In this document: positions 25,200-50,178 of the stretch, piece after piece
Position numbering within the stretch: the first letter of the stretch is position 1
Layout: each line of letters starts with the position of its first letter
Source: Selaginella moellendorffii
Lineage: Eukaryota > Plantae > Lycopodiophyta
NCBI RefSeq assembly: GCF_000143415.4
Contig: NW_003314334.1
Location: 699,614-763,613 of the forward strand
Direction: 5' to 3'
DNA: 64,000 nucleotides
Program-made: the position numbers and the translations under genes
The notes under the pieces: generated by a model
The model's database searches: none
The model's input: the letters and a program-made list of their open reading frames with translations, nothing else
Told to the model about the DNA's origin: nothing

Positions 25200-26050
25200 T
25201 TAATCGGAAACATTTGCTACTCTCCCACTGCCTCTTTTTTTCATCAGAACCCGTGCTACCATTTCCCCCATTAACACCACAACAACAATAGAGTCCATGA
25301 CGCACACCATCCTGTTTCCCCACCTCCAGTCTGGATATAGACGTTTACAGACATAAATTATAGGTATGCAACCTGGCTCGCATAAAGAAAGTATAGGATA
25401 TCCACCAATCACCTCATATATGTGGTAATGATCTTGCCCTTGGCGGTCAGCAAATCCATGATTTGGAAAAAGCCATCTTTTCCAGCCAAGAAAACGGGGT
25501 GTTTCTATGAACCATCTCATTATGGCGGATGTTCCTGCACAAGAATGTGCTATTGCAGACAAAACTTGCCAAACGATAAACCAGGAGCGAGTTGAGACAT
25601 ATGTGCTTGCTAATGCACTCGCTGCTCCAATAAAAATACTAACCAGCATACAGCACCTGGAGTGCAAGAGAGTAACGATTCCAATAATAGCTGTAAAAAC
25701 ATCTTAGAAATAATATTTTATGAGACTGTCTTACCTCCAATAATATAGCCCACTGATAAAAAAGTATATATGTGGTGAGTGAAGCAAACAAGCTGCCAAT
25801 ATCGAATGGCAGCGTACTTTGGCCCAATTGTTACATAAGCCAAGTAATCCGACGTAAAACCCCAATGGTAGCCAAGGTTTAGTGCATTGCAGTCTCTTCG
25901 ACAATAGAGAACACCACTTGGGCAGTGCCACTTTGGAGGATAAAAAGTGATGTAAATGGTGAAAACATAGAAAGTAATGGCCCAAGTCATAATTATTGAA
26001 ACAGGTAAGAAGAACCACCACAATGGAACGCTTTTACTAGTAATTTCCAT
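25200..26050 (-). CDS. Family A OCT/SLC22-derived membrane protein, 268 aa, exons 26050-25735 and 25690-25200
   Basis: 44-nt GT-AG intron (25734-25691) joins the two ORFs in frame (316+491=807 nt); PxWxC..C..C..WQLVC loop, GxIIG helix and ETPRFL motif resemble plant OCTs; an extra upstream exon cannot be excluded. Confidence 0.75.
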
Positions 26051-26099
26051 ACCCAACCTTTCAAGCCCTAATAGATCCTATGCAGAATTTAAGCACAAG

Positions 26100-26575
26100 A
26101 ATCCCTTTACCAGGGGTAAACATCTGCCAATTCGATGGAACTTACTTCCACAACGATTGAAGCAAAATCGATGTCAAGAGAACGTGGAAACACTCACCGG
26201 ACAGTGTCTTTCAGCTGCTGTCATTGAATAGATTCTTGTAGAAACAATGCTCCGGCTTGGAAGCAAGGAAAATCTTCTGAGTGAAATCAAAGACGACGAT
26301 CCCGCACACCAAAACCTGGCGATATCGTGAGCAGCTGGCACGGCATGGCGCTGGAGATTTAGAGTAGGGGAATATCCAAAGTAAACTGACGGAAAACTTG
26401 TAAGCGATCAACAATCAACATTGATCTGCAGTGTATCTCGAGTGTTGATAAAGTTCTTCTGATGCCTCGTAACTCCATAGTCTATCATCAAGGTGATCGC
26501 GAGAGCGAGTGAATTTTTAACCCAGGTGCCAGGCCAAGACTCGACATCCATCATCCCGACAGTGCTTAAATTCCT
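26100..26575 (-). pseudogene. Unidentified coding remnant (also 35150-35755 and 62410-62900)
   Basis: Coding-like peptides shared by three copies (WPGTWVKNSLALAITLMIDYG, NFWMANSAVWDDDAVPAAHDIARFW); family not recognised. Confidence 0.35.
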
Positions 26576-29500
26576 TAAACTGATGGATGTGGGGAGAGAA
26601 GGTAAGATGTGAGAGAAGAGATATGAGGCAGATGGTAACAAATCCTCCGTACTCTCATGAGCTTATAGTACGTCCTAACAGGTCTGTTTCGAGGAGCTCT
26701 GGTCCGTTCCTGTTCCTCATCCGTTCCGTGCCACCTGACCTTGTATCTCCCAGTGTGCTTTCGGTTGCAGCATAGGCTGCCTGTCGGAGGAGACAAACTC
26801 CGGCGCAGGAAAAAACTCCGGGAGCTGGTCCGCAAAAGCTTGAGATCCGACACGTCGAAAACGTTATGTAGGTGCGACCCCGGTGGTAATGCCAACTTAT
26901 AGGCGAGCTCCTTGATCTTTTCGAGTATCCTGAGTGGGCCGAAGAATCTGGGATGGAGCTGTGACTACACGAGGAGATTCCAACCGTTGCCCAATCAGCC
27001 GCTGCATCTTCCTGATGGCTTCCACTTGGTCACTGACGTCGTTTGATGAAGTGGGAGTTGTCATCAAGATCGGAAGCTACTGGTATGGAGACATACTGAT
27101 GGTTGAGTGCCGAGCAGTGTTGTAGGCAAACTCCGCGAATGTTCCCAGCTGGTCCACACGTATCCCCAATGTCTCAAATCGTCCGTCCCGTCTGACCATC
27201 TGTCTGGGGATGGTAGGCGGTGCTGAAGCTCAGTGTTGTCCCTAACGTTGTGAAAAGGTCTTTTCAAAACTGGCTGAGAAACCTGGTGTCTCGGTTGGAG
27301 ACGATTTCGCTTGGAACGCCATGGAACCTCACCACCTCCCTCCAGAAGATCTCTACCACCTTCTTTGAAGCTGAGGACGAGAGCTGGCGCTGATGGAGAA
27401 GGTAAATGCTTGAGAAGACCAGGTGTTGCGACTATCTCTGGACACTCCCTGATCCAAGTGCGTATCTCACACTCCATTCCTTTCCACACGACCCCGGATG
27501 CCCCGCGAGAATGCCTTGGTGAAGATGATCTTGCGGAACTCGAGTAGAATCCTTCCTTTCTTCTAGAGCAAGCCGTCATGGAAGGAAGTCTTCGCATCGT
27601 TGAAGTTGTTGTCTCCTTCGAGTGGTCATCGTTGGATTAGCCCTCTATGATTTCTGGTGTGACAACTGGCCTCCGGCTTTTCAAACATCCTTGAGAGCGC
27701 ATCAGGGACGACGTTTGTTTTCCCTGGCTTATACTCAATCGTGAAATCGAGTGATTGAAGCTGCCTCTGCTTTTTGTTAAGGCGAGGCTGCTCGAGAAGA
27801 AATTTCATACTGAAGTGATCCGTGCGACCTCGCGCCTCCACTTTGTCAATCATACGCCGGCTGGCGAGACTCCACTTCCAAGAATCTTTTGCTCTCGAAC
27901 TTCAAGATCGCTCCCACTCCTGCATCCGAGGCATCGTCTCCACGATGAACTGCTTCTCAAAGTCTGGAAGTTGAAGAATCGGAGCCGAAAAGTTCGAACG
28001 ATGACTGTGCGTTCTCGTCCCACGAAAACCTGCCTGCACGAATGATGTCCGTCAGAGGCGACGCAACGGAAGCATAGTGCTCCACAGACTTCCAGAGGTA
28101 GTTGCAGAGCCTGAGAAAAGCATGGAGCTACTTCATGGTGGTGAGAGACCTCTCATCGCCTCCATTTTTGTTGGATCGGCTCGCATTTGGCCCGCTCGTA
28201 TCCGGAAGCCTAAGTACTTCGCTTCTTGCTTGGCAAAGCAGCATTTTGAGAGTTTGACGATCAGCGCATGATCCTCTAGCACTTGCAAAACCTCGTCGAT
28301 GTGTGTAAGGTGTTCTTCCCAGGATCGACTGTAGACGAGGATGTCGTCGAAAAATACAATGACCGATCTTGTTCATGACAGACTGAAAGGTGGCCAGGAT
28401 GGTGAGCCCTCACCTTAAACTGGTAAAACCCCTCTGTGAGTCTGAAATGCTGTCTTCATCCTGTTTTCTCTGCCATGGATATTTTATAATATGCAGATCG
28501 CAAATCTAGCTCGGAGAAATAAGTTGGGATGGGGAGTGACGTTGTTGAGCTGTCTGTAATCAACGCACAGTGCCGTCACGTTTTAGCACCAAGATTATTG
28601 GTGCCGTGTAAGGACTGAAACTGTCCTCTTTAAGAGATTGTCCATGAGCTCCTTGATCATCTTATCCACCTCCGGTCGCTCTACATGGCTCACCTGAATG
28701 AAAGTCGTGACGATCCCTTGCTCGAGTTGGATCTTGTGCGTGATTGCTTCATGAGCACAAACTCGGTTGAGGAAGACCCTTGAATACTTCCTTGCCACCT
28801 CACGAATGGCTTCCGTGGTGTACTGCTTCCTCCAACGACCTGGTTCTCTCTGGTTCCCCTCCCCTGTGACTGGAGAAGTCGGAACTTGGTACATGGTTGG
28901 ACCTTGCAGCTAGGCCTGAGAAAGCTGAAGATGTCGTTTCGAAAGGATCTCTTCTGGTTCCCATCCATTGGAAGAAGAATCCCTGTTTCTGAATCATACG
29001 CCATGGGACATCCTCCTCTCGCGATCAACCCCCGGCATTGTCCAGCGGTTGCCCGTGTCTTCTTTCCAATGTCCACTCCCCCCTCCAGACGATCTTCCTC
29101 CCCTGGTGATTGAAGGAGAGACGATGCTCATCAAAGTTGACGAGAATGTCCCCAAAGAGGCGAGGTGTTTCGATGCCCAGGATGAAGAACTCTCCTTTCA
29201 CTTGGTGACCACCAATGAGCATCGAGCATGAGACCCGGGCAGACGCCTCGATGACTCCCTTGTCCGCTATCTCCACCTCTAGAGGAGTCTTCTGTGGACG
29301 CGCTGCGAGCTGCAGCTTAGATAGAGAATGTTGGTTGACGGTGTCACTCCCGAGTCAATTAATGCGAATGCTTCCTGCTAATCGTTCCTTTGACTCGGAA
29401 ACAAGTACCCGCAGCTTTTCCCATAAAGGCCGGATAGGAGATGCATGGCTTCGCCACAGAAAGTTCTCCCTCAAGCCCCGCGTCCTCCTCTTCTCGCTGC

Positions 29501-30152
29501 TCCTGAGGCCAATGTGGTACATCCGTCTACAGGACTAAGATATCCTTGTCATCTTTTGCATTCTCCCAAGTGCACGGAATGAGGTCCCCCTTGTCCGAGA
29601 CCTGGAATTGCATCACCACGAACTTTGTTTTCGACGTCAGTTGTCCTCTATGCGCCTTGCAAACTTCCCAATGAACATTTCCCAAGCTTGAGGTCATCGC
29701 TTCCCTTTACTTGCATTGTTTCCGCTGATCGGGGGTTGGCATACCACTCTGGGGTGGCTCCGGCCCTCGTTGTCTCCTTTGGTGGCCCTTGCCTCCATCG
29801 GCCGGAAAGACGAGCTTCCCACTCGTGGAACTTGAGATCCGTGTTTAATGCTAATGCCATCGCTTGCTGGACCGAGCGAGGAGATAGCTGAGCTATTTCG
29901 GTTGCCATTGCGATGCTAGGTAACGTTGCATCAAAGCATCCTCCGGGATGTTGGTCACCTCGTATCTCGCCTTAAGCCACGTCTCGTTGAATTCCTGAGC
30001 GTCTGGGACTTGAATCTGTACACCATTCCGCAGAGTTTGTTGAAGGGAAGCTCCCCCACGGACTTGATGATAATGCTCCGGAATCCTTTGCTTGAACTCC
30101 TCCCAACTTGGAAGCCTGGTTTTACAGTCTCAAGCGAGAAGGGACTCGGTCT
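26575..30152 (-). mobile_element. Chromovirus-type Ty3/gypsy element, 5'-truncated, riddled with deletions
   Basis: Protease LIDSG, RT VFFDDILVYS, RH IEYKPGKTNVVPDALSR, integrase [25 protein letters not shown] and chromodomain-like YKVRWHG. Confidence 0.9.
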
Positions 30153-30446
30153 TGTCATCATAGCTCAGCTACATAGAAAATATTTAGTTTACCAGCATAA
30201 TAAAGAAAAGAAAAGAGAACTTGATATACCACTACCGTATTCTCTTTAAGTGCAGCATCCATCTCAAAAACGTGTAGCTTGACAGTTGGGATTGTTATCA
30301 TGCTTTGTGTGCCACCTCCAGACTTGCAATTGTGGAGGGTGCTCCATTCATATGCAGTTCAGTTAACATTTTGCATGTGACACGTGTTGCAACACTTTTT
30401 TCTCTCGCCTCAGGCAAATGGCTGCCTCCAGAGCAAACATCAACAT

Positions 30447-30763
30447 GATTATTGCTAAGATGTGGTTAAAGAAATAACCTTTCTACAATTAACCCCCATC
30501 AGACGGCTGCAATTGACTGGATCTGGCAGCCCAAAAAGTTCAGCACTCCTTCCTTTTCATGTTATTTAAATAACCTATATAGGATTACCTATTAGGGCTT
30601 GACAGATTATTGCTAAGATGTGGTTAAAGAAATAACCTTTTTACAATTAATCCCCAATCAGACGGCTGCAATTGACTGGATCTGGCAGCCCAAAAAGTTC
30701 AACACTCCTTCCTTTTCATGTTATTTAAATAACCTATATAGGATTACCTATTAGGGCTTGACA
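30447..30763 (+). repeat. About 158-bp tandem duplication immediately upstream of a family A gene
   Basis: Units 30447-30604 and 30605-30763 nearly identical. Confidence 0.95.
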
Positions 30764-30771
30764 GCTTGGGT

Positions 30772-31626
30772 ATGGAGATTACTAGTAGGAGCATTCCATT
30801 GTGGTGGTTCTTCTTACCTGTCAATTATCATGACCTGGGCAATTAGTTTCTATGACTTCACCACTTATATCACATTTTATCCTCCAAAGTGGAATTGCCC
30901 AAGTGGTGTTCTTTATTGTCAAAGAGACTGCAATGCACTAAACCCTGGCTACCATTGGGGTGTTACATCAAATTACATGGCCTATGTGAAAATTGGGCCA
31001 AAATACTCTGCCATCCGATATTGGCAGCTTGTTTGCTTCACTCATCATGTATATACTTTTTTATCAGTGGGCTATATTACTGGAGGTAATATTAGAACAG
31101 CTGTATAAAATATTATTGCTAAACTGATTTTACAGTTATTGTTGGAATCGTTACTCTCTTCCACTACAGGTGCTTTATGCTAGTTAGTATTTTTATTGGA
31201 GCAGCTAGTGCATTAGCTAGCACATATGTCTCAAATTGCTCCTGGTTTATCATTTGGCAAGTTTTATCTGCAACAGCACATTCTTGTGCAGGAACATCAG
31301 CCGTAATGAGATGGTTCATGGAATCACCTTATTTTATTGGTTGGAAAAGATGGCTTTTTCCAAATCATGGGTTTGCCGACTGCCAGGGGGGAGATTACAA
31401 CCTTATAGGTGAAGTAATTGGTGAATATCCTATATGGTCTATTTGTGTGCCAGGTTGCATACCTATCACTTTTGTATGTAAACATCTATATCCAGACTGG
31501 AGGTGGGGAAACAGGATGGTGTGTGTCATGGACTCTATTGTTGTTGTGGTGTTAGTGGGAGAAATGTTAGGACGAGTTTTGATGAACAAAAGAAACAGTG
31601 GGAGAGTAGCAAATGTTTCCAATTAA
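30772..31626 (+). pseudogene. Family A gene with a 2-nt deletion near codon 16 (exons 30772-31085, 31136-31626)
   Basis: Same 50-nt intron as the 49322-50178 copy; exon 1 is 314 nt rather than 316 (CCTGTCA vs CCTGTTTCA); the rest is open from MTWAIS. Confidence 0.75.
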
Positions 31627-31781
31627 GTGTGTAATATTAAAGAGTTTGAACTTTGGGCTGGTTAAAATGAGAATTCACGTGCCACCACAGATAATGAAAG
31701 TGTTCACAGGTTTTTTTTAACATATAGCAGCATAGACAAGAAATCACCTCTAAACATTAAACATTGCACACCCTCTAAATG

Positions 31782-31786
<5 letters not shown>

Positions 31787-31832
<46 letters not shown>
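31787..31832. repeat. (GA)23 microsatellite
   Basis: Direct reading; lies 3' of the family A gene, like the (CT)n at 49095. Confidence 0.98.
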
Positions 31833-31836
<4 letters not shown>

Positions 31837-31859
31837 CCCAGTCTAGAACACCAGTGCTT

Positions 31860-32070: not shown

Positions 32071-32071
32071 G

Positions 32072-32490
32072 GGCTAAATTATTCTGCAATTTAATATTGG
32101 CAACTTCCTTGCTTCACTCCATATCTATATACTTTGCTATCACTGGGCTATGTGGCTGGAGGTAAGCTAGATTTATTTATGGATAATTGTTAAGCAATTT
32201 GTTTCAGTTGTCTGCTACTTACTTCAAATACAAGTTATCCATGCTAGTTAGCTTTGCTATTGGAGGAGCTCACATATGTTTTACATTCATTGCTTTACAA
32301 GTAGCACATGCTTATGCAGGGACATCATCAAATTATGAGGTGTAGATAGAGATACAGGAATGCACTGAGGACGAATCTATACCATATGTTTCATATCAGG
32401 TATATTTACTTTTTACCCTTGATCCGGTATTTATCATATGGTTATGTTGATAATGGATATTGGATATATAAAAATATTCTGATGCTCTAG
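32072..32490 (+). pseudogene. Family A remnant (duplicate of 23080-23490)
   Basis: Nucleotide near-identity; WQLPCFTP and VAHAYAGTSS. Confidence 0.65.
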
Positions 32491-32749
32491 TAACTTTTTA
32501 CTTTAGCAGCTTTGGTTAAAAACCAAGTGTTAGTAACATATGTCGTATCCATAATCTCGCTCATTGATTCTATAGACATTGCACTGAGGATGAGTATTGG
32601 ACCAGAGGATATGCCAAGCAGGGCATATGCTAAAAGGAATTTATTGTATTCTTTTCATTGAAGCGTTTGTAAATTTCTATTCGATCAAATGCCTAGCTGT
32701 AATCCCAGCCATTGCCAAGATGAGGCAAATGGGTATAATTAAGGCTTTT

Positions 32750-34040
32750 TACGACCGAGAAAGGTCTCGTGCTGTCGGAGATTTCGTGCAAATCCGGAAT
32801 TTGGTGGAGGTTTGAGACGATGGCGACGAGGAACTTGGCTATGCCTTGTAGAAGAGGTCAAGAGGATGTTTTTCCGGATGCCGGACTCTCGTGTCCTGGA
32901 ATTGCCTACATCAATCGCCGCCGCCTATGCCCACGGGATCCACCAGCAAATGCCCGCAAGGGACTTGATATGCTCGTCGCGATGCTCGGCCAGGCTGGGA
33001 GAATGGAGGACGCGCTCATGATCCAGCACAAAATGCCGAGATATGGAACGTTTTTACCTGGAACGCGATCCTCTCGGGCTACGCCATCCAATGTCGTTTG
33101 ACAGCATCCCGGACGAGATAGTGAATTGCCAGTGCTGGACGAGTTTGATGCACGCTTACGCTCGCAATGGCCGTGTGATCGAGGCTCGAGCTGTTCTTGC
33201 CGCAATGCGCACGAGAGATCTTGCTGCCTGGAACTTGATGATGGAAACATATGCCCAAAAAGCGCATTACAGGGAAGCCATCCACGACCACGCTCGATGG
33301 CGGAGTGAGGATCGATCTCGTCTCGTTCATCACCGTCCTCTCGGCCTGCAAGATCCCAATCGCCCGCGATCAGTTCGTGTCTATGGTCGCCTATGATCGC
33401 TGACTATGGCATCGTTCCAATGGGATCACTACTCTCGAGAGATCGGAAGGCTTTGCGACGCCGAGAGTTTGCTCGAGACGATGTCTTTCGTGCCTGCCTG
33501 CCCTCTCCCATCGGCGGATTGGTGGAATACAAGAGATGGATCGCCGAAATCCATCCAATGCCGCCGAGGTCTTAGTTCATCCCGGCTCTTCGATCGAATG
33601 CCCCATCGCGACGCTTTGCCAGGGAGCAATCCAAGAGCCTCCTATGCCACAGTGGAATCTCGTGTCCTGCAACGATCCTACATCCGGAGCTCCAATCTCG
33701 GCCAAGTGAAGAAGATCTTCGTTTCCATGCCGGATCACCGTGGTCTCTTGGAACTCGCTCATTACACTGTATGCTCAGTCCGGGCATCTTGCGCTCGCCA
33801 AGAACACGTTTGATGGGATGGCGTTCCGCGATCTTGTCTCGTATATGTGGCAGCCTCCCGGATCCGCGACTGCCAGGCTATGTTCGATCGCGTCTCAGAG
33901 TGACAGGGAACTCGATGATCACGGAGCTCGCGCACCAGGGAGAATGCCGGCCAAGGATCTCGTGTCATGGACGAATCTACTGCTGTGCTACGCCCAGAAT
34001 GGATTCCTGGAAGACTCAGACAGGGCTCGCCAACGGAGTG
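32750..34040 (+). pseudogene. PLS-class PPR pseudogene (duplicate of 23750-25030)
   Basis: Same PLS motifs and shared lesions. Confidence 0.9.
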
Positions 34041-34208
34041 GGATTTGGCCACCTTATTTGTGTTTTAAACTACAATAATATCAGGCTCACTGGGAGAAGT
34101 GGCAAGGATTTTCCCCATGTCCCCCTCGCACTTTGACAGTACTTCAAATCCTTTACAAACTTTCGCATTAACCACATAATATTACACAAAAGAAGCCATA
34201 TTTCTTTC

Positions 34209-35059
34209 TTAATCGGAAACATTTGCTACTCTCCCACTGCCTCTTTTTTTCATCAGAACCCGTGCTACCATTTCCCCCATTAACACCACAACAACAATAG
34301 AGTCCATGACGCACACCATCCTGTTTCCCCACCTCCAGTCTGGATATAGACGTTTACAGACATAAATTATAGGTATGCAACATGGCTCACATAAAGAAAG
34401 TATAGGATATCCACCAATCACCTCACATATGTGGTAATGATCTTGCCCTTGGCGGTCAGCAAATCCATGATTTGGAAAAAGCCATCTTTTCCAGCCAAGA
34501 AAACGGGGTGTTTCTATGAACCATCTCATTATGGTTGATGTTCCTGCACAAGAATGTGCTATTGCAGACAAAACTTGCCAAACGATAAACCAGGAGCGAT
34601 TTGAGACATATGTGCTTGCTAATGCACTCACTGCTCCAATAAAAATACTAACCAGCATACAGCACCTGGAGTGCATCAGAGAAACGATTCCAATAATAGC
34701 TGTAAAAAACATCTTAGAAATAATATTTATGAGACTGTCTTACCTCCAATAATATAACCCACTGATAAAAAAGTATATATGTGGTCAGTGAAGCAAACAA
34801 GCTGCCAATATCGAATCGCAGAGTACTTTGGCCCAATTGTTACATAAGCCAAGTAATCTGACGTAAAACCCCAATGGTAGCCAAGGTTTAGTGCATTGCA
34901 GTCTCTTCTACAATAGAGAACACCACTTGGGCAGTGCCACTTTGGAGGATAAAAAGTGATGTAAACGGTGAAATCATAGAAAGTAATGGCCCAAGTCATA
35001 ATAATTGAAATAGGTAAGAAGAACCACCACAATGGAACACTCTTACTAGTAATTTCCAT
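34209..35059 (-). CDS. Family A OCT/SLC22-derived membrane protein, 268 aa, exons 35059-34744 and 34699-34209
   Basis: 44-nt GT-AG intron gives an uninterrupted 807-nt CDS. Confidence 0.75.
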
Positions 35060-37341: not shown

Positions 37342-37359
37342 TTTGTTTTTTTCTCATAG

Positions 37360-38596
37360 GCTGCCAGCTATCACAGTTACACTCACCTTGAGTTTAATGT
37401 ATTCTTTGAGAGACTTTGTATGTACGGGTAAAGAAGTCAATGGTACGCAAGCCTCTGTTCATGCTTGTACTGAAATAGTAAAACAAAATTTTCTTGCTGC
37501 TTTCTGCAGTCACTCATACCTGGAGCAATAACACGGATTTCCCTGAAGCGACTGGTCTCCAAGACCGGTTTGTTAGAGAACTTATTGTAGAGGCTTTGTT
37601 CGCGAGCAATCTTTTTCAGCTGTTGTCGCTGGTTTACGCTCCCAGGAAATGGGGATTAGCAGGATGGGCGCCCTCTATCAAGGACGGTACCGCAGGTAAG
37701 AGAGCTGTTGCTAGAAACTTCTTGTGTCTTTGTTGCTAATCCAGACACTGGATTGATTCGGATTATGCTGGGTACGATTGCTCTGACAATTACTTGCGAG
37801 TCCAGTCACGTTAGTTTGCTGTTAGTCTACATGGCTTGTTGCTTTTTCTGTTCGTGTTGCCATCTGGCCTGCCTAAGAGCATGGCGTACATGGACTGCGA
37901 GCCAGAAAACATCGAAGACGTGACACGAGCGCTTGATGCAAAACACTGTAGCTTGCGGAGAGCAGATTGTCCTAGCAGCGGTTGACGTGGTTCGTGGACA
38001 ATCTGAGAGTGCAGAAGTTCTATTCTACTTCAGAATCGGTGTTTGCAGTCACTTGCAAAAAGCAGGGAAGTAGCCAATTCTCTCAAATCCAAGTCATTTG
38101 TATTAGAAAAAGATACAAGAAGACTTTCTACTTTATATTCTTGTACTAGAAGAAGAAGAAGACCGTATTCGCGAACATAGCACTCACAGCTCCTCCTGCA
38201 TGGGCATAGTCCTTCTCCCAATGGGAGAAAACTCCCCAAAACAAAGCAGAAATTAGAGAACACACGGAGAACACGACGTACAGAGGTGACCGTGGGAAAC
38301 CAAGCCGAAGAACTCCGCGCAGGCCAAGAGGAAAGGCTGATGCTACGACGTAGATTCCCGCTGTGACCCAGATGCGTGGCGGCTGGTGCTGAAACGCGAG
38401 CGAAAACCCAGGAGACGCAAGACTGAGCACCAGCGAAGAACACAGTATCGCGACTCCTCGTCCCCGTTCAGCAGGCAGCTTGGCAATCACCGTGAACAGC
38501 CCAAACACACAGAAGAAACCTGAGAATGCAGCGACGAAGGCCGACACGATAACCAAGTGGTGGTAGTCTATGCGATCGCTGTTCCACTTCTCCACA
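37360..38596 (-). pseudogene. Family B remnant (more divergent 3' part)
   Basis: ORF 38146-38595 EKWNSDRIDYHHL...WGVFSHWEKDYAH is paralogous to 51058-51762. Confidence 0.7.
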
Positions 38597-40063
38597 TCTT
38601 TGATTCGTGGAGCAGCAAATGGGGACTCTTGGGCTCTTCAGGAAAGCTAGGAATCTTTGGCTCGGGACGCATTTCACCAGCATTCTCACAGGAAGAAGAG
38701 AGAACGAGAAAAACATACCTGTCTCGCCCGCAATGCCACCAAAAACCCTCTTCACAAGTAAAAATCTCATGGTTTTGACCGTCTGGTTAGTTAAGCCAGT
38801 AGGAGCGCGTCTGGTTAGGCTACGGCTGGATCGGAATGTCCACCTCCAACTTTATGATCCACTGCGGTTCAAACGCAAAAATCTCACTTCCACAAATCAA
38901 ATAACTTTATAAGTTCCTGTTATTTTCCAAAACACGTTTGAAGGGCAACAATAAATAATTTATATAATCAAACAGGGCAAAACCTTTTCTGGGCTTATAA
39001 GCTAAATCAAACTTTTTTCTTGGGACTGGAACTTGGAGCAAGGAATAGTTAGTAAGCATATACATCTCAAATCACTCATGGTTTATCATTTAGTTTACAA
39101 TAGCACATGCTTGTGAAGGAAAATCATCTATAGTGAGGTGGTTCATAAAAGCACTTTGTTTTCTTGGCTGCAAACGATGGCTTTTTCCAAATCATGGGTT
39201 TGCAGGCAACAATATATATGTATAAGGTGATTGGTGGATATCCTATGATTTCTTTATGTGAGCTAGTTTACATATTTTGTGTAGACGATGCCACAATGGC
39301 AGAAGATCAACTTTGATCTAGTGTTTTTTATTAAGTGTTACTAAATTAGACTTAACATCTGTACTTTACTACACAAGCATAAAGAAGGAATAAATGTCTA
39401 TTTAACTCAACATACTTGGCTTAGTTTGTTAATTTTATGTTGCTCTATTTTTCATTAGCTTAACAAAAATCCCCTCAACATTGATCCTAAGCTTGCCAAT
39501 TGGGTGTGTTTTCATGTGGGTTTATAGGTTTGTTTTATTAATATGGTTTTGTAATTAATTTTTTAATTAGCGCTCCACCTCCATTTTCTCTTGTTGAAGC
39601 TGGCAAAGCTGGAGAATCAGTGGAGACGGACCAGTGCTTCAATCATGACTATGGTGCTCGCTATTTTGCTAGCCAACACTAGGGCCGTGCTACCTAGATC
39701 AAAAAAGAAATGAGGTAAGCTATCTACTCTTACTTGCGTGTAGCCAACACTCTTGTTGCACATCCTCGTCACATAAGAAAAGCAATTGTTATGGTACAAA
39801 GAATCTCAACTCACTATATTGATAGCCTCTCTATTCACAATGCTGGACTAGCTGAAGGAAAAGAAAAAAAAAAAAAAACAACAATAATCTAATGTACCAC
39901 TAGATCCACTTACCCACACATGAATCCCTCAAACTTGAATTAAGCCATTACTTGGATCATCATGAAGAAGTAGCAACTTCTCCTCTTGCGGCTTGGAGTG
40001 GGTTAATAGATTAAACTAGTATTGATCGGTGATAAAAGAATAATACAAACTACATGTTTGGAT
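38597..40063. repeat. Long inverted-repeat arm, partner 44960-46613; partial direct copy at 56590-57520
   Basis: Reverse-complement collinearity apart from one internal inversion. Confidence 0.85.
39045..39290 (+). pseudogene. Family A exon-2 remnant
   Basis: AHACEGKSSIVRWFIKALCFLGCKRWLFPNHGFAG. Confidence 0.7.
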
Positions 40064-40064
40064 A

Positions 40065-42555: not shown

Positions 42556-43108
42556 AGCTACACGTCCGCCCGGTCCCTGGACGATCTAGACACCTGCAAT
42601 GATCGTCAAGGACCTGGTGGAGCCAGTGTCGGACACCTTCATCAACCTCGTGAACATGGACTACGTCGAAAAGTAGTGTGGCATCCGGATCAGGAAGGGG
42701 GGGAGCACGCAGGCCCAGCCGCTGGAGAGCTTCGCAGTGAAGATCTCCAACTTCGAGTCCAAGTTCTCCAGTGCAGTCTCCGAAGGTGGAAGGGTGGCGG
42801 TGGCGGTGGCGGGCAGTATCAAGGACGTGCTTCCACACCTCTCGCAGGTCGGGGAGTTTAGCATGGAAGTGAGCCTGGAGGCATCGGTCATCCTGTCCAA
42901 ACAGGTGGATCAGCTGGGGATCATCGGGAAAGTTGGCGGGCTGCTGGGCGACGGGAACGTGAACGTGAGCTTCATGAGCGTGGGGAGGACTTCGCCCAGG
43001 AAGCAGGCGGTGATGGCGATTGGCGTGGATGAGGAGCCGAGCAAGGAAGTGCTGCACAGGGTCAGGGCCATCCCGGCGGTGGAGGAGTTCGTGTTTCTCA
43101 AGCTCTAG
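42556..43108 (+). pseudogene. PGDH: D-3-phosphoglycerate dehydrogenase C-terminal (ASB+ACT) fragment
   Basis: YTSARSLDDLDT, VEPVSDTFINLVN, QVDQLGIIGKVG...NVNVSFMSVGR...QAVMAIGVDEEP...EEFVFLKL; no N-terminus; stop and frameshifts. Confidence 0.92.
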
Positions 43109-43258
43109 GAAGCTTTTTCTATCACAGGTTGATAGAAAATCTCTGGAAGATCATCGCTCAAGCGAAGTTCTATACATTGTCCAGCATTGACAAGGTTTGA
43201 AAGTAGTATTTGATCGTTCTTGTGTGAGTGAGAGCCGTGGTCAAACTTTAGGATCATT

Positions 43259-43835
43259 ATGGCGAACGAGGAGAAGGTGTGTGTCACCGGCGCTTCTGGC
43301 TTCCTGGCATCTTGGCTCGTGAAGCGGCTATTGGAGGAGGGATATCACGTCGTCGGGACTGTGCGCGATCCAGGTACATAGAAACGAGAAGAAACATAGT
43401 CTAATTCTCTTGTTTGTGGTACTAGACGATGCGAGCGAGACTTCCCACCTGTGGGAGCTTCCAGTAGAGGCTGGAGCTCAAGAAGGCCGACCTTGTCACG
43501 CAAGGGGCCTTTGACGATATTGTTCAAGGCTGCGATGGAGTATTCCATGTCGCGGCTGCCATGACTATCAGCTACAAGGAGGATCCACAGGTAACTTTGC
43601 TTGACTCCTTCGATTCGGTCTAACCTTGTATCACTTTTACTGGTTGTTTTTGCTTTCGGTTCTTCTTCCAGGCCGAGATTGTTGATCCATGCTTGCTTGG
43701 AACTCTAAAGGTGCTCAATGCCTGCAAGAGATCCACGACAGTCAAGCGAGTGGTGTGCACGTCAGCCGTGGCTGCTGTTCGCGTGAGGAACGACTTCAAG
43801 CCCGATGACGTCTTGGATGAATCGGTGTGGAGCTC
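43259..43835 (+). pseudogene. TKPR1/DFR/CCR-like NAD(P)H reductase, exons 1-3
   Basis: [59 protein letters not shown]...LDESVWS with GT-AG introns; lesions in exon 2. Confidence 0.92.
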
Positions 43836-44389
43836 TTTTGTCGAGTCAAAGCTTAATACAATTTACAATTACAGCCAATCCTCTAGCAAGAAGGACGTTG
43901 TGAACCGGCTTCGTGGCTTGCTGACGATTATGGATTTGGAGATCTAGGAAGACTCAGTTGCCATCCTCACTAGATTCTCTATTTTTCCAATATCGATTTC
44001 TTCGGTCTAACTTGCCCAAATCCCATGATCTCAGGAGACAAACCCCGGACCAAGAAAAATTAAACAATGGAGCGAAGTCAGCAAGACCAAGATCAAACAG
44101 AGGTAATGCAATTATGCAATTATGCAAAGACAAAGTTGATGCATCCAGCAAACTCAATCAAACGCATAAAGAAAGTAGACCAGACAATCGGGACGAATTT
44201 GGCATTGAAGACGTGCGAGTTCTGGTTTGAATGGGTGATTGAGGGTAAATTCCCCAGAATGTCTTGTAAATGCAGAGAAAGATATTCTACTCTTGCACTT
44301 CTATCTTCTTTGTTTTTTATTGGAAGCTTGACTGATTCAAGGTGCTCGTGTTATTTCCATAGCACTTTATTGGAAGTAAACTATCAAAC

Positions 44390-44800
44390 TCAAGTTAAGA
44401 GGCCTTTGCGTTCCAGGCTCTCAACGCAATCGTCGAACATTTGCTCCAGCGACTTGAATTGGATCCCAAGGTCGTCCTGAAGCTTTCTGGAGCTGAATCC
44501 CTTGAAATTTGCCGGCGACCGGACCTTAATCCTGAGGTGAGCTTGAGCAACGTCGTCGAGATGGACGTATCCAGCGTGATCTATCCACTGCTTGGCTCCT
44601 GCAATGAGTTTGGAATCTCAAAAACGTCCCGTTTTTTTTCTTCCGATATAGAAAGGCTTGCCTTGGAGCGCGGTGGCCCTGGACGAGAGAAGTTCTCCAG
44701 CGATTAAGCTGGGAGCGATTGTGATCACATCTATGCCACTTTCTTTCCCAAACTCGAGTGCTGCTTGCTCGGATAGAGTCTTTCCCAGACCATACCACAT
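44390..44800 (-). pseudogene. Inverted 3' exons of the same reductase
   Basis: WYGLGKTLSEQAALEF (YxxxK), GYVHLDDVAQAH, FKSLEQMFDDCVESL. Confidence 0.9.
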
Positions 44801-45810
44801 CTAAACTTCAAAAACTTTTTAAGAGTTGGTCCTTTGGAAATAAGACTGATTCTCATGGCAGCACAAGAAAATAAAGAACCAAGATCGCGACCTAGCATGC
44901 GCGGATTCCTGATGACGATCGGCTATGATCCTGCGCAAATGGGCAAGAAAAGCCACATGATTGTTATCCGAACATGCAGTCTGATTATTCTTTTATCACC
45001 TATCAGTACTAGTTTATCCATTACCCGCTTCAGCCGCAGAGGAGAGTTGCTTCTCTTTCCATGATGATCCAGTAATGGCTCGTCAGTCTGAGGGATCATC
45101 TGTGGTAAGTGATCTAGTGGTACATTAGATTGTTGTTGTTTTTTTCTTTTTTTCTTTTTCTTCAGCTGGTCTAGCATTGTGAATAGAGAGGCTGGCATTG
45201 TCAATATAGTGAGTTGAGATTTTTTGTACCATAACGGTTGCTTTTCTTATGTGAGGAGGATGTGCAGCAGGAGTGTTGGCTACACGCAAGGAAGAGTAGA
45301 TAGCTTAGCTCATTTCTTTTTTGATCCAGGTAGCACGGCCCTTGTGCTGGCTAGCAAAATAGCAAGCACCATAGTCATGATTGAAGCACTATAGGTCTGT
45401 CTCCACTGATTCTCCAGCTTTGCCAGCTTCAGCAGGAGAAAATGGAGGTGGAGCGCTAATTAAAAAATTAATTACAAAACCATATTAATAAAACAAACGC
45501 ATAAAGCTTAAGCAACCCATATGAAAACACACCCAATTGGCAAGCTTAGGCTCAATGTTACAATATATATGTATAAGGTGATTGGTGGATATCCTATGAT
45601 TTCTTTATGCGAGCGAGGTTGCATATTTTGTGTAGACGATGCCACAATGGTAGAAGATCAACTTTGATCTAGTGTTTTTTGTTAAGTGTTACTAAATTAG
45701 ACTTAACATTTGTATTTTACTGCACAAGCATAAAGAAGGAATAAGTGTCTATTTAACTCAACATACTTGGCTTAGTTTGTTAATTTTATGTTACTCTATT
45801 TTTCATTAGC

Positions 45811-46025
45811 TTAACAAAAATCCCCTCCACCTGCAAACCCATGATTTGGAAAAAGCCATCGTTTGCAGCCAAGAAAACAAAGTGCTTTTATGAACCACCT
45901 CATTATAGATGATTTTCCTTCACAAGCATGTGCTGTTGTAAACAAAATGATAAACCATGAGTGATTTGAGATGTATATGCTTGCTAATGAGTAATTTCTA
46001 TACAAATAATAAAGCAGTCTAAGCT
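45811..46025 (-). pseudogene. Family A exon-2 remnant
   Basis: ORF 45811-46005 RWFIKALCFLGCKRWLFPNHGFAG. Confidence 0.7.
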
Positions 46026-47885
46026 ATGAAAATTTGATATTATAGATTTGTAATTTATGCATAGATTTATATTTTTGAAACTTGATTATTTCTAGTGACA
46101 ATTCCAGTTAATTGTAATTTTATAGATTAGTAATGTTTACATGTAGATAAGTGTACAGACAAGAGCTTCTAAAGTAATTCTAATAGCAAGCATCTTGCTC
46201 CCAAGAAAAAAGTCTGATTTAGCTTATAAGCCCAGAAAAGGTTTTGCCCTGTTTGATTATATTAATTATTTATTGTTGCCCTTCAAACGTGTTTTGGAAA
46301 ATAACAGTAAAATAGCGGAACTTATTAAGTTATTTGATTTGTGGAAGTGAGATTTTTGCGTTTGAACCGCAGTGGATCATAAAGTTGGAGGTGGACATTC
46401 CGATCCGGCCGCTAACAGCTCTTGTTAGTCTAACCAGACGCGCTCTTACTGGCTTAACTAACCAGACGCTCAAAACCATGAGATTTTTACTTGTATGTTT
46501 TTCTCGTTCTCTCTTCTTCCTGTGAGAATGCTGGTGAAATGCGTTCCGAGCCAAAGATTCCTAGCTTTCCTGAAGAGCCCAAGAGTCCCCATTTTCTGCT
46601 CCACGAATCAAAGAGGTGTGGTTTTGGTTTTTGGTGCTAAGTTCTCTCTTTTCACCCGTATCTGGTCTCTAGGAACCAGATACGCTGGAGAAGATTCATT
46701 TGAGTGCTTTGCTTCTGGTGTTACCCGGTTTACCAATTTTGTTTCTCAAGCTATACAACTCGACTTACGTTTTTCTTTGACAGGCTTCACGTCTCTGCCC
46801 AAGCCCTTGAGCGAGTTTAGCCGGGATCTTGCGGAGGCAGTCAGGTGAAACGATTTGTTGAGGACGACTGGAAGTTGAGCGGCTCTTTCTTTACGGAGAC
46901 GAGGCAGCTGAGAAGCATCGAGTTGTAAAAGACAGGGCTCCGTCAGAAGGCGCAATTGCAAACTTCCGAGTCTTCATCATGGGTGCTTCTTTGGCATTTG
47001 TATGGAAACGGTAGCATCGCTTCTTACGTTTCAACGGGACTGACTTTATTGCTTTTTGAAAGCGCAGTCCGGCTTTACAAGAAACGATGAGACTGCTCAA
47101 ACTTGTCTTCGTCTTGTCTCGAGAGTCTGGCGTCCAAGGAATTGGATTTAGAAAAGAAGGTAAAACTCTTGCATGGAGTATATCCGTGTCTACAAATGTT
47201 ATCACTACAGGAAGGCGGGCCTATGCACTCAGAAGCTCGTTCGATAACACGGGCTATCAAAAACATATCGGAACTCACTATGTTCGACATTTGGATTCTG
47301 ATGCTCCAACTCCAGGTTGCATCCCGAAGATCAGGTACTACGCTCTTACGGGTCCTCTTCTTACGTGTATCGTATTTATCGCAGAAACTGGAACATAATC
47401 TTTTAGAGATGTGCGGAATCTAGCTGGAAGAAACGCAAAGGCGCAGGACCTGTGTCCAACAGGGATTGCTCTTCGTTGCTCAGGTACATGAAACAAATGT
47501 TTCTAGACATCTTAAGCAAGCAGTGTTCTAAAACTTTCTTCGTTTTTCTTGTGATACTAGAGGAGAGAAGCCAACTTCAAAACAAGATAAAGCACTCGCG
47601 CTGCTCAAATCCAAGCTCCTGGTGATTCTCGAGCAAAAACCAGTTGCTTATTTTCTTGAATTAATGACACAGCTATCTTTCATTATCAGGCGTGGAGAGC
47701 TGGCTGCATGACTGCTCATTCAACGAGCGCGCTTTAGACGCTACAGAGCTTGATGGAGGAAGGAGGATATAGAAGTGGGCTTGCTTTTGTGCTTCCGAGG
47801 TATGGACTTGAACTTGTGTTTGTGTTTCCAAACAAGGTGTTCCAGAAAATAGGGTCAAGTGAAGGGGAGAGATACGAGAGTCCCG
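45950..47885. repeat. Long inverted-repeat arm, partner about 55340-57345
   Basis: Reverse-complement collinearity. Confidence 0.88.
46616..47885 (+). pseudogene. Family C copy (uncharacterised, hydrophobic segments)
   Basis: WHLYGNGSIASYVSTGLTLLLFESA, LESLASKELDLEKKVKLL, ISELTMFDIWILMLQL; stops and frameshifts. Confidence 0.55.
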
Positions 47886-47943
47886 TTAAGGTACTTTGTG
47901 ATAAACTTTTGACTAGCTCGTGATTTCTTTTTCTACAAAACAG

Positions 47944-48272
47944 ATACCTTGCATGATTGTATCCAAGAAAGGGGATGCCCGAGAAAAGCTGCTAGAGACT
48001 GTCAACGAGTTCCCTCCAACAATGTTAATACTGGGAAGCCGAGGCCTCGGAATGGTGAAAAGGATCGCCAAAAAGCTCTAGTTTCCATTCCTTGTAGTTA
48101 GGAAATCCATAGCTAGAGATGTTTTCTTGGAAATTTTTTGTATGGATAATGATAGGATGGGCTCTTTGTTTTCAATCAAACCGTGGATTTAGACAGGACG
48201 TTCCTGGGAAGCGTGAGTGGCTATGCTGCACAGCACGCTGAATGCCCTGTGCTTATTGTCAAGCTTCCACCC
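47944..48272 (+). pseudogene. Universal stress protein (UspA-like) 3' exons only
   Basis: KGDAREKLLE...LILGSRGLGMVKR / TFLGSVSGYAAQHAECPVLIVK; 5' exons replaced by repeat; donor after 48062 is not GT. Confidence 0.88.
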
Positions 48273-48528
48273 GTAAGATTTTATGTGTTTCAAATGCCTT
48301 TTTTCTCTTTTTCTTTTGAGGGACCTATAAGCGGTGCGTTCTTCAGTCGGCACTTTCTTAAGTTTACCCTCAGAAAGAAAATCGATTCGCTTGTTCAGGA
48401 CCAAAATTCTCAACAAACTATTGTTTGAAAAAAGCTCTAGAAACTGTTCAAGTGTCGCTTTGAGGATCCGAAAACACAGAATTGGTGCTAATCGTTGGCA
48501 CAAGTTTAGGCTTATTCCTTCTTTTCCT

Positions 48529-48583
48529 TAAGTTGTAGTATAGTGTGACGCGGACAACTGGGGTTCGATCCCCTGCAACTGCG
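48529..48583 (+). tRNA. tRNA-Asp-derived pseudogene with internal deletion
   Basis: GTTGTAGTATAGTG...ACGCGG...GGTTCGATCCCC.GCAAC.GCG matches the ends of plant tRNA-Asp(GTC); D-arm 3' half and anticodon 5' half missing. Confidence 0.75.
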
Positions 48584-48679
48584 CTTGTCAGGAAAGTGTG
48601 AATTAAAGAAGACGATCGGGAACATTGTAGCTCAAAGTGCTTAATTCGTTCAATTGCTCATTGGATTGCAATATATCTT

Positions 48680-49075
48680 TTGTTCATTAACACCACAACA
48701 GCAATATAGTCCACAACGCAGACCATCCTATTTCCCTAGACGTCTACACAAGGTATGCAACCTGGCTCGCATAAAGAAACTATAGGATGTCCACCAATCA
48801 CTTCACATATATTGTTGTGATCATCCCCTGGGCGCCTGCAAACCTATGATTTGGAAAAGAAAACAAGGTGCTTCTATGAACTACCTCATTATGGCTGATC
48901 TTCCTTCACAAGAATGTGCTGTTGCAGACAAAATGATAAACCATATTTGAGACATATATGCTTGCTAATGTACTCCAATAAAAATACTAACCAGCATACA
49001 ATGTAAGAGAGTAATAATAACTCTAATAATAATTGGAAAAACACATTAGCATAATGAAACAGTCTAAGTTGATAT
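48680..49075 (-). pseudogene. Family A exon-2 remnant
   Basis: SATAHSCEGRSAIMR, CEVIGGHPIVSLCEPGCIP segments with deletions. Confidence 0.7.
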
Positions 49076-49091
49076 TCCAACTCTAAACCCT

Positions 49092-49094
<3 letters not shown>

Positions 49095-49164
<70 letters not shown>
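49095..49164. repeat. (CT)35 microsatellite
   Basis: Direct reading. Confidence 0.98.
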
Positions 49165-49168
<4 letters not shown>

Positions 49169-49321
49169 TATGACTGGCAAAGTCGTAATGTCACCGCAGA
49201 AGTCTATGCTGCTATATATTAAAAAATCCACACTCTCTGAATACTCGCATTATCTGTGGTGGCACATGAATTCTAGTTTCAACCAGCCCAAAGTTCTCTT
49301 GATCACTTTAATATTACAAAC

Positions 49322-50178
49322 TTAATTGGAAACATTTGCTACTCTCCCACTGTTTCTTTTGTTCATCAGAACTCGTCCTAACATTTCCCCCACTAACACC
49401 ACAACAACAATAGAGTCCATGACACACACCATCCTATTTCCCCACCTCCAGTCTGGATATAAATGTTTACACACAAAAGTGATAGGTATGCAACTTGGCA
49501 CACAAAGAGAACCTATAGGATATGTACCAATTACTTCACATATAACATTGTCATCTTCCCTCAGACAGTCGGCAAATCCATGATTTGGAAAAAGCCATCT
49601 TTTCCAACTAATAAAACAGGGTGTTTCCATGAACCATCTCATTACAGCTGATGTTCCTGCACAAGAATGTGCTATTGCAGACAAAACTTGCCAAATAATA
49701 AACCAGGAGCGATTAGAGACATATGTGCTGGCTAATGCACTAGCTGCTCCAATAAAAATACTAACCAGCATAGAGCACCTGTAGTGGAAGAGAGTAACGA
49801 TTCCAATAATAACTGTAAAATCAGTTTAGCAATAGCATTTTATACAACTGTTCTAATATTACCTCCAATAATATAGCCTACTGATAGAAATATATATACA
49901 TGACGAGTGAAGCAAACAAGTTGCCAATATCTTATGGCAGAGTATTTTGGCCCAATTTTTGCATAGGCCACGTAATATGATGTAAAACCCCAATGGTAGC
50001 TAGGGCTTAGTGCATTGCAGTCTCTTTGACAATAAAGAACACCATTTGGGCAATTCCACTTTGGAGGATAAAATGTGATATAGATGGTGAAAACATAAAA
50101 ACTAATTGCCCAAGTCATAATAATTGAAACAGGTAAGAAGAACCACCACAATGGAACACTCGTACTAGTAATCTCCAT
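49322..50178 (-). CDS. Family A OCT/SLC22-derived membrane protein, 268 aa, exons 50178-49863 and 49812-49322
   Basis: 50-nt GT-AG intron at the same codon position and phase; uninterrupted 807-nt CDS. Confidence 0.78.

What the first reader, a model, noticed from the sequence alone, without database searches (positions are those of the whole stretch)
25200..50178. Expanded family of 268-aa mini-proteins apparently derived from organic cation transporters (OCT/SLC22)
Seen: the paired short ORFs at 25200-26050, 34209-35059 and 49322-50178 each splice through a phase-1 GT-AG intron into an open 807-nt CDS. Exon lengths are constant (316+491) although the introns differ (44 vs 50 nt). They are the only intact genes I find in a window where everything else is shredded by indels. 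Known: plant OCTs have TM1, a PxWxC..C..C..SxxxEWxLxC four-Cys external loop, FFxGCLIGG (TM2), GTCALVL (TM4), ESPRWL after TM6, and WxxRRLxxxM at TM7. These proteins have PKWxC..C..C..SAIRYWQLVC, YIIGAIIG, GTSA(I/V)M, then immediately WF(I/M)E(T/S)PxF, and WGNRMVCVM plus a last helix. Inference: TM5-6 are deleted and TM8-12 lost, leaving about five helices. This cannot be a canonical 12-TM MFS transporter, so it may be neofunctionalised (oligomeric pore, receptor or transporter modulator).
Basis: partly seen in the sequence, partly recalled or inferred. Interest (0 to 1): 0.85.

Follow-up and report, generated by a model that had tools for sequence, protein, structure and literature searches.

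The report
Half-size OCT-like membrane protein gene family
A spikemoss (Selaginella) gene cluster holds three intact, one frameshifted and about nine decayed copies of an unannotated two-exon gene for a ~268-residue membrane protein that looks like the first half of an organic-cation (SLC22/MFS) transporter; selection has kept it, but it is almost silent in the RNA data checked.

Summary
Copies A (25200-26050), B (34209-35059) and C (49322-50178) each read as 316 + 491 nt across a phase-1 GT-AG intron of 44, 44 and 50 nt. A fourth copy, D (30772-31626, + strand), has a 2-bp frameshift, and about nine decayed fragments lie around them.

Pairwise dN/dS is 0.27-0.33. Indels are confined to the intron.

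The only relatives in public protein sets are uncharacterised Selaginella moellendorffii proteins. XP_024519092.1 (253 aa) is collinear end to end and has a phase-1 intron at the same alignment column, so no exons are missing.

Descent from OCT/SLC22 has weak but concordant support. A family core profile ranks OCT2 and OAT1 first in the PDB (E 0.003-0.016), in register with their W-x-L-V-C motif. The 253-aa relative's best NCBIfam model is TIGR00898, the OCT family (E 7e-4). Language-model neighbours of exon 2 are MFS_1.

Six hydrophobic segments fit TM1-TM6, the N-terminal half, better than a TM5-6 deletion with TM7 kept.

Two RNA-seq runs show essentially no reads. The AlphaFold model was too poor to use. 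Function is unknown.

This scan had already found the family on other DNA of this genome (s1-430280, s1-385082).

The parts
25200..26050 (-). Copy A, intact. Exon 1 26050-25735 (316 nt), phase-1 GT-AG intron 25734-25691 (44 nt), exon 2 25690-25200 (491 nt). Encodes 268 aa.
34209..35059 (-). Copy B, intact. Exon 1 35059-34744, intron 34743-34700 (44 nt), exon 2 34699-34209. It is 95-96% identical in protein to A and lies in a tandem segmental duplication spaced about 9.0 kb from A.
49322..50178 (-). Copy C, intact. Exon 1 50178-49863, intron 49862-49813 (50 nt), exon 2 49812-49322. About 81-85% protein identity to A.
30772..31626 (+). Copy D. Same structure: exon 1 30772-31085, intron 31086-31135 (50 nt), exon 2 31136-31626. 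A 2-bp deletion between 30820 and 30821 shifts the frame after codon 16. It is a young pseudogene, or the deletion is an assembly error.
   Evidence: no reads covered it
62958..63243 (+). Copy E. Exon 1 remnant, 77-87% protein identity, with a frameshift and a stop. The intron and exon 2 are deleted: the next bases, 63252-63730, match the region downstream of B's stop codon in inverted orientation.
   Evidence: (I4)
48676..49018 (-). Copy G. Exon 2 pseudogene just downstream of C, about 55-59% identity, with stops and a frameshift.
374..803 (+). Copy F. Decayed copy carrying both exon 1-like and exon 2-like parts, 50-62% identity, with stops. It overlaps the place that scan note s1-418154 called SWEET-like.
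5621..5803 (-). Fragment K. Exon 1-like, with stops.
23019..23359 (+). Fragment L. Exon 1-like and exon 2-like, with a stop. Its duplicate M is at 32071-32351 in the 9-kb repeat.
32071..32351 (+). Fragment M, the duplicate of L.
39049..39262 (+). Fragment I. Exon 2-like, with a stop.
45832..45984 (-). Fragment H. Exon 2-like, 61-63% identity. No open continuation beyond the fragment.
57257..57382 (+). Fragment J. Weak exon 2-like piece, 40% identity.
51061..52502 (-). Neighbour gene from a second Selaginella-only multi-TM family. It is homologous to the 284-aa ORF that precedes a family gene in public locus L002. Here it lies about 880 nt upstream of copy C on the same strand. It reads as two ORFs in different frames, with a low-complexity insertion between them.

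Best explanation
These are members of a Selaginella-restricted, tandemly amplified gene family evolving by birth and death. Each intact gene has two exons and encodes a membrane protein of about 268 residues.

The protein consists of TM1, a Cys-containing outward loop of about 50 residues that ends in W-x-L-V-C, and then TM2 to TM6. That layout is the N-terminal six-helix bundle of an organic-cation-type (SLC22 / TC 2.A.1.19) MFS transporter. The whole C-terminal bundle and the central loop are gone. MFS motif A in the TM2-TM3 loop is also lost.

Shown:
- the gene structure;
- purifying selection;
- collinearity and a shared intron position with an annotated 253-aa paralogue;
- weak but concordant OCT/SLC22 profile matches over the W-x-L-V-C to TM4 core.

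Inferred:
- that the last two hydrophobic segments are TM5 and TM6;
- that the protein works as an oligomer, most simply a dimer of halves. Such a dimer would recreate a two-bundle cavity lined by the residues that are invariant across the three subfamilies: His in TM4, E-x-P after TM4, D-W-x-x-G-N before TM6, and Asp and Glu in TM6.

The stated confidence is for identity (a selected N-half descendant of OCT). I put the dimeric-transporter mechanism alone at about 0.25-0.3.
For: Gene model:
- GT-AG phase-1 intron and constant exon lengths in A, B and C.
- Exon 1 aligns to P0002 residues 10-100 (40% identity, E 5e-21). Exon 2 aligns to residues 103-251 (30% identity, E 3e-23). The two ends coincide.
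- The P0002 gene (XP_024519092.1) has a single 53-nt phase-1 intron at the same alignment column. Its next gene starts about 215 nt downstream.

Selection:
- dN/dS is 0.27-0.33, with Fisher p down to 2e-9.
- Indels are confined to the intron.

OCT kinship:
- The PDB core-profile search puts OCT2 and OAT1 as its four top hits (E 0.0033, 0.015, 0.016, 0.23), in register at residues 122-212. The full-length family profile also ranks OCT2 first, at E 0.004.
- P0002 and P0006 both have TIGR00898 as best NCBIfam model (E 7e-4 and 6e-3). For P0002 the sugar-porter and SV2 MFS models come next.
- TIGR00880 (MFS) matches exon 2 of C and D at E 0.03.
- ESM Atlas: 49 of the 100 listed hits belong to the MFS_1 family set, scoring up to 0.91.

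Six helices:
- Kyte-Doolittle peaks.
- Helix pattern of the AlphaFold model, which is low in confidence.

Taxonomic range:
- Only Selaginella moellendorffii proteins were found in 1.8 and 5.8 billion sequences.
Against: - No Pfam MFS_1 or Sugar_tr hit for any exon or paralogue. The best is E 6.
- OCT matches are only 18-21 bits and cover only the core. Separate profiles of TM1 plus the loop, and of TM4-TM6, find no SLC22 chain.
- Searches of the large databases found no OCT at E up to 10.
- The AlphaFold model has pLDDT 42.6, so there is no structural test.
- In the window copies TM5 is only weakly hydrophobic and carries Glu and Pro.
- Expression is not shown. Two raw RNA-seq runs, about 12% sampled each, gave zero depth on D and on exon 2 of B, and about 1 on exon 1 of B. 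No splice joint was seen.
- Nothing supports the oligomer idea.
Confidence: 0.62

Rival explanations
1. The protein is an OCT derivative that kept TM1-TM4, lost TM5-TM6 by internal deletion, and kept the post-TM6 ESPRWL motif plus TM7. That gives about five helices.
For: Motif resemblance only: W-F-I-E-T-P-R-F to E-S-P-R-W-L, and W-G-N-R-M-V-C-V-M to the TM7 start. No tool result supports it.
Against: - The OAT1 alignment puts the family Glu at the end of TM4.
- Two hydrophobic segments follow it, not one.
- P0002 has a clean fifth helix.
- The D-W-R-W motif before the last helix resembles, from memory, the H-W-R-W that opens TM6 in OCTs. This was not tested.
- The reading needs an extra internal deletion event.
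Confidence: 0.08
2. An unrelated, Selaginella-specific six-helix membrane protein family. Its likeness to SLC22 would be chance or a composition effect among helical membrane proteins.
For: - All OCT matches are below 21 bits and cover about 60-110 residues.
- There is no Pfam hit.
- N-terminal and C-terminal sub-profiles find nothing.
- The ESM Atlas search found no usable hit for exon 1.
Against: - Two separate libraries rank the same family first: the PDB chains and the 18,950 NCBIfam models.
- Both do so in the same register and at E 7e-4 to 0.016.
- The match includes the SLC22-typical W-x-L-V-C at the end of a Cys-bearing TM1-TM2 loop.
- Composition bias would be expected to bring up assorted membrane proteins instead.
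Confidence: 0.15
3. The window copies are non-functional. They would be recently duplicated relics whose open frames and low dN/dS reflect past selection on a parent copy or gene conversion, not present function.
For: - Expression is near zero in two RNA-seq runs.
- One of the four young copies is already frameshifted and about nine older ones are decayed.
- The setting is rich in transposons.
- Homology between the A/B and C/D lineages stops at the CDS edges.
Against: - dN/dS is 0.32 (p 0.014) even for the youngest pair, A-B.
- There are no indels or stops in three copies, although dS reaches 0.33 and the small intron carries indels.
- Intron position has been conserved for far longer in the family.
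Confidence: 0.13

Closest known systems
Organic cation transporter family (SLC22; TC 2.A.1.19; NCBIfam TIGR00898), within the MFS
   Same: - A Cys-bearing extracytoplasmic loop between TM1 and TM2 that ends in W-x-L-V-C.
- TM2-TM4 alignable in register with OCT2 and OAT1.
- TIGR00898 is the best model for the paralogue.
   Different: - Only about 268 residues and six hydrophobic segments, against about 520-560 residues and 12 TM.
- No C-terminal bundle and no central cytoplasmic loop.
- Motif A (D-R-x-G-R-K) is replaced by H-x-R.
- No ESPRWL after TM6.
- The loop is about 50 residues, against about 100 in animal SLC22.
- Scores lie far below every curated threshold.
Selaginella moellendorffii uncharacterised proteins XP_024519092.1 and XP_024525003.1 (253 aa), and the gene hidden in the chimeric models EFJ09277.1 and SELMODRAFT_425052
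   Same: - Collinear over the full length.
- Same two-exon structure with a phase-1 intron at the same column.
- Same conserved motifs: P-L-W-W, S-A-I-R-Y-W-x-L-x-C-F-T, Q-V-L-S-A-x-x-H-x-C-A, D-W-x-x-G-N.
   Different: - Only 30-40% identical.
- The window subfamily has a longer TM4-TM5 loop and a less hydrophobic TM5.
- It is absent from the public protein sets.
Half-size transporters that work as dimers: bacterial SemiSWEETs against eukaryotic SWEETs, half-size ABC transporters, and split LacY halves that complement each other (established knowledge, not tested here)
   Same: One structural repeat of a two-repeat transporter, encoded as a separate polypeptide.
   Different: For those proteins, dimerisation and transport have been shown. 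Here neither is shown, and I know of no naturally occurring half-MFS described in plants. Two full-text searches found none.

Membership tests
MFS (Pfam MFS_1 / Sugar_tr) | Match to the family HMM at the gathering threshold | tested here: not met
   No hit at E up to 10 for any exon piece. P0002 matches MFS_1 at E 6 and 6.1 bits, against a 33.4-bit cut-off.
MFS | Two six-helix bundles (12 TM) in one chain | tested here: not met
   105 + 1 + 162 residues with six hydrophobic segments. The paralogue's annotated gene ends at the same point.
MFS | Motif A, G-x-x-x-D-[RK]-x-G-R-[RK], in the TM2-TM3 loop | tested here: not met
   In the OCT2 alignment, D-R-F-G-R-K faces l-l-h-y-r. Only one basic residue is kept.
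SLC22 / OCT (TC 2.A.1.19) | Extracytoplasmic Cys-containing loop between TM1 and TM2, ending in W-x-L-V-C just before TM2 | tested here: met
   The loop is about 50 residues with four Cys in the window copies; three Cys are invariant family-wide. R-Y-W-x-L-V-C aligns to T-E-W-[ND]-L-V-C of OAT1. The loop itself gave no PDB match.
SLC22 / OCT (TC 2.A.1.19) | NCBIfam TIGR00898 at its curated cut-off | tested here: not met
   It is the best model for P0002 and P0006, but at 18.5 and 15.4 bits against 550.75. The window exon pieces do not hit it.
SLC22 / OCT (TC 2.A.1.19) | MFS N-domain fold by structure comparison | tested here: inconclusive
   AlphaFold2 on P0002 with the 12-row family alignment gave pLDDT 42.6 and pTM 0.28. 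That is too poor for a fold search.
SWEET / MtN3 (reading of scan note s1-418154 for window 1-960) | Match to MtN3_slv and a 3+1+3 TM layout | tested here: not met
   Window 374-803 is a decayed copy of this family. The neighbouring ~7-TM family has no MtN3_slv or PDB hit.

The most novel reading that the evidence does not exclude
A land plant has kept, under selection, free-standing six-helix halves of an MFS transporter. They would assemble as homodimers, or with another membrane protein such as the ~7-TM protein encoded immediately upstream in two loci, into a working transport or channel unit. That would be a natural return to the 6+6 state proposed for the ancestor of the MFS.
Probability: 0.2. 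Interest if true: 0.8.

Novelty: new variant of a known kind. Interest (0 to 1): 0.5.

Why it matters
MFS transporters are thought to have arisen by duplication of a six-helix unit, yet free-standing halves are rarely seen in nature. A selected, multi-copy half-MFS family would be a natural system for two questions. Can one bundle fold, reach a membrane and work as a dimer or a modulator? And how do new membrane-protein families arise from truncated duplicates?

The family is confined to Selaginella as far as the databases show. It has no Pfam family. The 268-aa subfamily is missing from public annotation. Two points limit the weight of the finding: expression of the window copies is not shown, and this scan had already found the family elsewhere in the same genome.

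Tried and rejected
- Pfam and NCBIfam on each exon piece gave nothing usable beyond TIGR00880 at E 0.03. The LIFR_D2 and LIF-receptor hits (E 0.01-0.05) are a short W-rich coincidence in a soluble Ig-like domain, and I dismissed them.
- phmmer of single exons against the PDB found no SLC22 chain. The exon 2 profile of the window copies alone found none either.
- The search for homologous proteins with exon 2 found nothing. With the family alignment it found only the two Selaginella models at E up to 10.
- In the representative search, three of the five hits were PKD or other repeat artefacts.
- The ESM Atlas gave no usable hit for exon 1.
- Sub-profiles of TM1 plus the loop, and of TM4-TM6, found no SLC22 chain in the PDB.
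- The AlphaFold2 model of P0002 was too poor (pLDDT 42.6). I ran no fold search and did not spend the second fold job.
- Complex prediction on P0002 x2 returned no answer, neither support nor evidence against.
- Read laying showed no splice joint and nearly no RNA depth. The 535-nt contig of run X2 over exon 2 of B cannot be called RNA, because the same run also covers the intergenic DNA beside it.
- Two literature searches found no description of natural half-MFS proteins.
- Exact look-ups of the neighbour ORFs found them absent from the collection.
- I could not obtain plant OCT sequences through the tools. No profile-profile comparison or tree against lycophyte OCTs was therefore possible.


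Full report
**Observation**

On the minus strand, copy A reads ATG at 26050 and exon 1 to 25735. A 44-nt GT..AG intron runs 25734-25691, and exon 2 runs 25690-25200 to a TAA stop. B and C have the same 316 + 491 nt exons, with introns of 44 and 50 nt. The in-frame pieces translate without stops to 105 + 162 residues plus the split codon.

It has the same build but a 2-bp deletion after nt 49 of exon 1.

tblastn with the exon peptides finds nine or so further fragments:
- 374-803
- 5621-5803
- 23019-23359
- 32071-32351
- 39049-39262
- 45832-45984
- 48676-49018
- 57257-57382
- 62958-63243

Nearly all contain stops or frameshifts, and the rest are short partial pieces.

A and B lie in a tandem segmental duplication spaced about 9.0 kb apart and 95-99% identical. 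C and D are 92% identical in inverted orientation.

**Selection**

- Nei-Gojobori dN/dS is 0.27-0.33 for all six pairs. dS is 0.06 for A-B, 0.19 for C-D and about 0.3 between the two lineages.
- Non-synonymous change is significantly depleted. Fisher p is 2e-9 for A-C, 4e-6 for C-D, 5e-7 for B-D and 0.014 for A-B.
- The CDS of four copies holds a single indel, the one in D. The 44-50-nt intron holds about four indel positions.

The three open frames are therefore maintained, not accidental.

**Relatives and gene model**

The joined protein was never submitted.

An exhaustive HMMER search with the exon 2 profile found two true hits among 1.84 billion representatives:
- P0002, 253 aa, E 1e-15.
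- P0003, 416 aa, E 3e-12.

Both are Selaginella moellendorffii proteins without names: XP_024519092.1 'uncharacterized protein LOC112342084' and EFJ09277.1. Further searches added only XP_024525003.1 and SELMODRAFT_425052.

Exon 1 aligns to P0002 residues 10-100 (40% identity, E 5e-21). Exon 2 aligns to residues 103-251 (30% identity, E 3e-23). Both protein ends coincide.

The P0002 gene (L001:10001-10815) has one 53-nt phase-1 GT-AG intron at the same alignment column: G-S-L-T-G|G against G-Y-I-I-G|A. Its next gene starts about 215 nt downstream.

This supports the two-exon model independently of RNA. It also argues against hidden exons that would restore a 12-TM protein.

**What the protein is**

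Single-sequence tests fail. No exon hits Pfam MFS_1 or Sugar_tr, and phmmer finds no PDB relative. Profiles give a weak but consistent answer:
- The 12-row family alignment, with exon pieces as separate rows, ranks OCT2 first in the PDB (E 0.004), followed by four OAT1 chains.
- A profile cut to the core, from S-A-I-R-Y-W to the end of TM4, makes the four best PDB hits all SLC22: OCT2 at E 0.0033 and OAT1 at E 0.015, 0.016 and 0.23. All align to residues 122-212, with R-Y-W-x-L-V-C on T-E-W-[ND]-L-V-C.
- P0002 and P0006 both have TIGR00898 as their best model among the 18,950 in NCBIfam, at E 7e-4 and 6e-3. Its name, '2A0119', marks the OCT family, TC 2.A.1.19. For P0002 the sugar-porter and SV2 models come next.
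- Exon 2 of C and D touches the MFS model TIGR00880 at E 0.03.
- The ESM Atlas neighbours of exon 2 are MFS_1 clusters, scoring 0.91.

All of this lies far below family thresholds and covers only the core. Profiles of TM1 plus the loop, and of TM4-TM6, find no SLC22 chain. I read it as descent from an OCT-type MFS gene, with about 80% confidence. It is not membership.

**Topology**

Hydropathy gives six segments:
- TM1.
- TM2, which spans the intron.
- TM3 and TM4.
- A weak TM5, with a peak of 1.4-1.5.
- A strong TM6.

In P0002 the fifth segment is a clean hydrophobic helix. The helices of the low-confidence AlphaFold model fall at the same places.

In the OAT1 alignment, the Glu of R-W-F-I-E-T-P falls at the Glu that closes the TM4 stretch, within a residue. 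The protein ends about 13 residues after the sixth segment.

The simplest reading is therefore the complete N-terminal bundle, TM1-TM6, with the C-terminal bundle lost. It is not a TM5-6 deletion with TM7 retained.

Motif A of the MFS is gone: D-R-F-G-R-K faces l-l-h-y-r. That fits a protein that no longer has a C-domain to gate against.

Residues invariant across the three subfamilies include a His in TM4, E-x-P after TM4, D-W-x-x-G-N before TM6, and an Asp and a Glu in TM6. This is the kind of polar set expected for a binding or conduction site. That last point is inference.

**Expression**

Two raw RNA-seq runs of the same species label were read at about 12% sampling each. They gave zero depth over D and over exon 2 of B, about 1 over exon 1 of B in one run, and no splice joint.

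A contig of run X2, which carries another species label, covers 34121-34655 with 8 mismatches. That run also covers the neighbouring intergenic DNA, so the contig cannot be called a transcript.

Expression of the window copies is thus not shown.

**Structure and assembly tests**

AlphaFold2 on P0002 with the shallow family alignment gave pLDDT 42.6, so I ran no fold search. A homodimer job on P0002 returned no answer.

**Context**

In public locus L002, a 284-aa ORF with about seven hydrophobic segments ends 63 nt before the ATG of an intact family gene. The JGI models P0007 and P0003 wrongly splice the two together and skip TM5.

A homologue of that ORF lies at 51061-52502 (-), about 880 nt upstream of copy C on the same strand. 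Further pieces lie at 38191-38595 and 22176-22331. It has no Pfam or PDB match. It is probably what scan note s1-418154 took for SWEET-like genes.

**Earlier scan notes**

The scan had already reported this ~268-residue family (s1-430280) and the 253-residue one (s1-385082) elsewhere in this genome. My tests agree with their reading of a six-helix first half that is nearly silent.

**Verdict**

This is a real, selected, Selaginella-only family of half-size OCT-derived membrane proteins in a birth-and-death cluster. Function and expression remain open.

Noticed in passing
window 51061-52502 (-), 38191-38595 (-), 22176-22331 (-); L002:10001-10855: A second Selaginella-only multi-TM gene family, with about seven hydrophobic segments and no Pfam or PDB match, lies directly upstream of a family gene on the same strand in two loci. 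The gap is 63 nt in L002 and about 880 nt before copy C. This may be a conserved gene pair. The window copy reads as two frames split by a low-complexity insertion.
   Followed up: partly
L002:10001-11769 (public models P0007 / SELMODRAFT_425052 and P0003 / EFJ09277.1): The public JGI gene models are chimeras. They splice the upstream 284-aa ORF into the middle of exon 1 of the family gene and skip its TM5. The locus in fact holds two separate intact genes.
   Followed up: yes
window 25200-26073 versus 49322-50201: Homology between the A/B and C/D gene lineages starts about 23 nt before the ATG and stops at the stop codon, although dS is only about 0.3. Sensitive blastn finds no flank similarity. 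The flanks have been wholly replaced, or only the gene body was copied or converted. Unexplained.
   Followed up: partly
window 23324-26016 versus 32323-35025; 26624-28431 and 33675-34153 versus 60561-63730 (inverted): Segmental duplications 95-99% identical carry the family copies. One is a tandem pair spaced about 9.0 kb apart (A and B). The other is an inverted third segment near 60.5-63.7 kb, whose family copy (E) has lost its intron and exon 2.
   Followed up: partly
window 24401-25170, 33406-34136 (+): PPR-like ORFs with S-W-N-S-L-I-T-L-Y-A-Q-S-G-type repeats, broken into overlapping frames, lie just downstream of copies A and B. PPR genes also follow the paralogue P0002 in L001 (11030-12673).
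   Followed up: no
window 8679-9485, 11549-12202, 17859-18419: LTR-retrotransposon pieces (RNase H, integrase and reverse transcriptase domains) lie within a repeat of about 10 kb in the first 20 kb of the window.
   Followed up: no
window 42737-43108 (+): An isolated ORF with an ACT domain (E 3e-7). It is probably the C-terminal exon or a fragment of an ACT-domain gene.
   Followed up: no
window ~49100-49170 and ~31780-31850: A (GA)n microsatellite about 150-200 nt downstream of the stop codon is shared by copies C and D. Read laying skipped 31773-31843 as a repeat.
   Followed up: no
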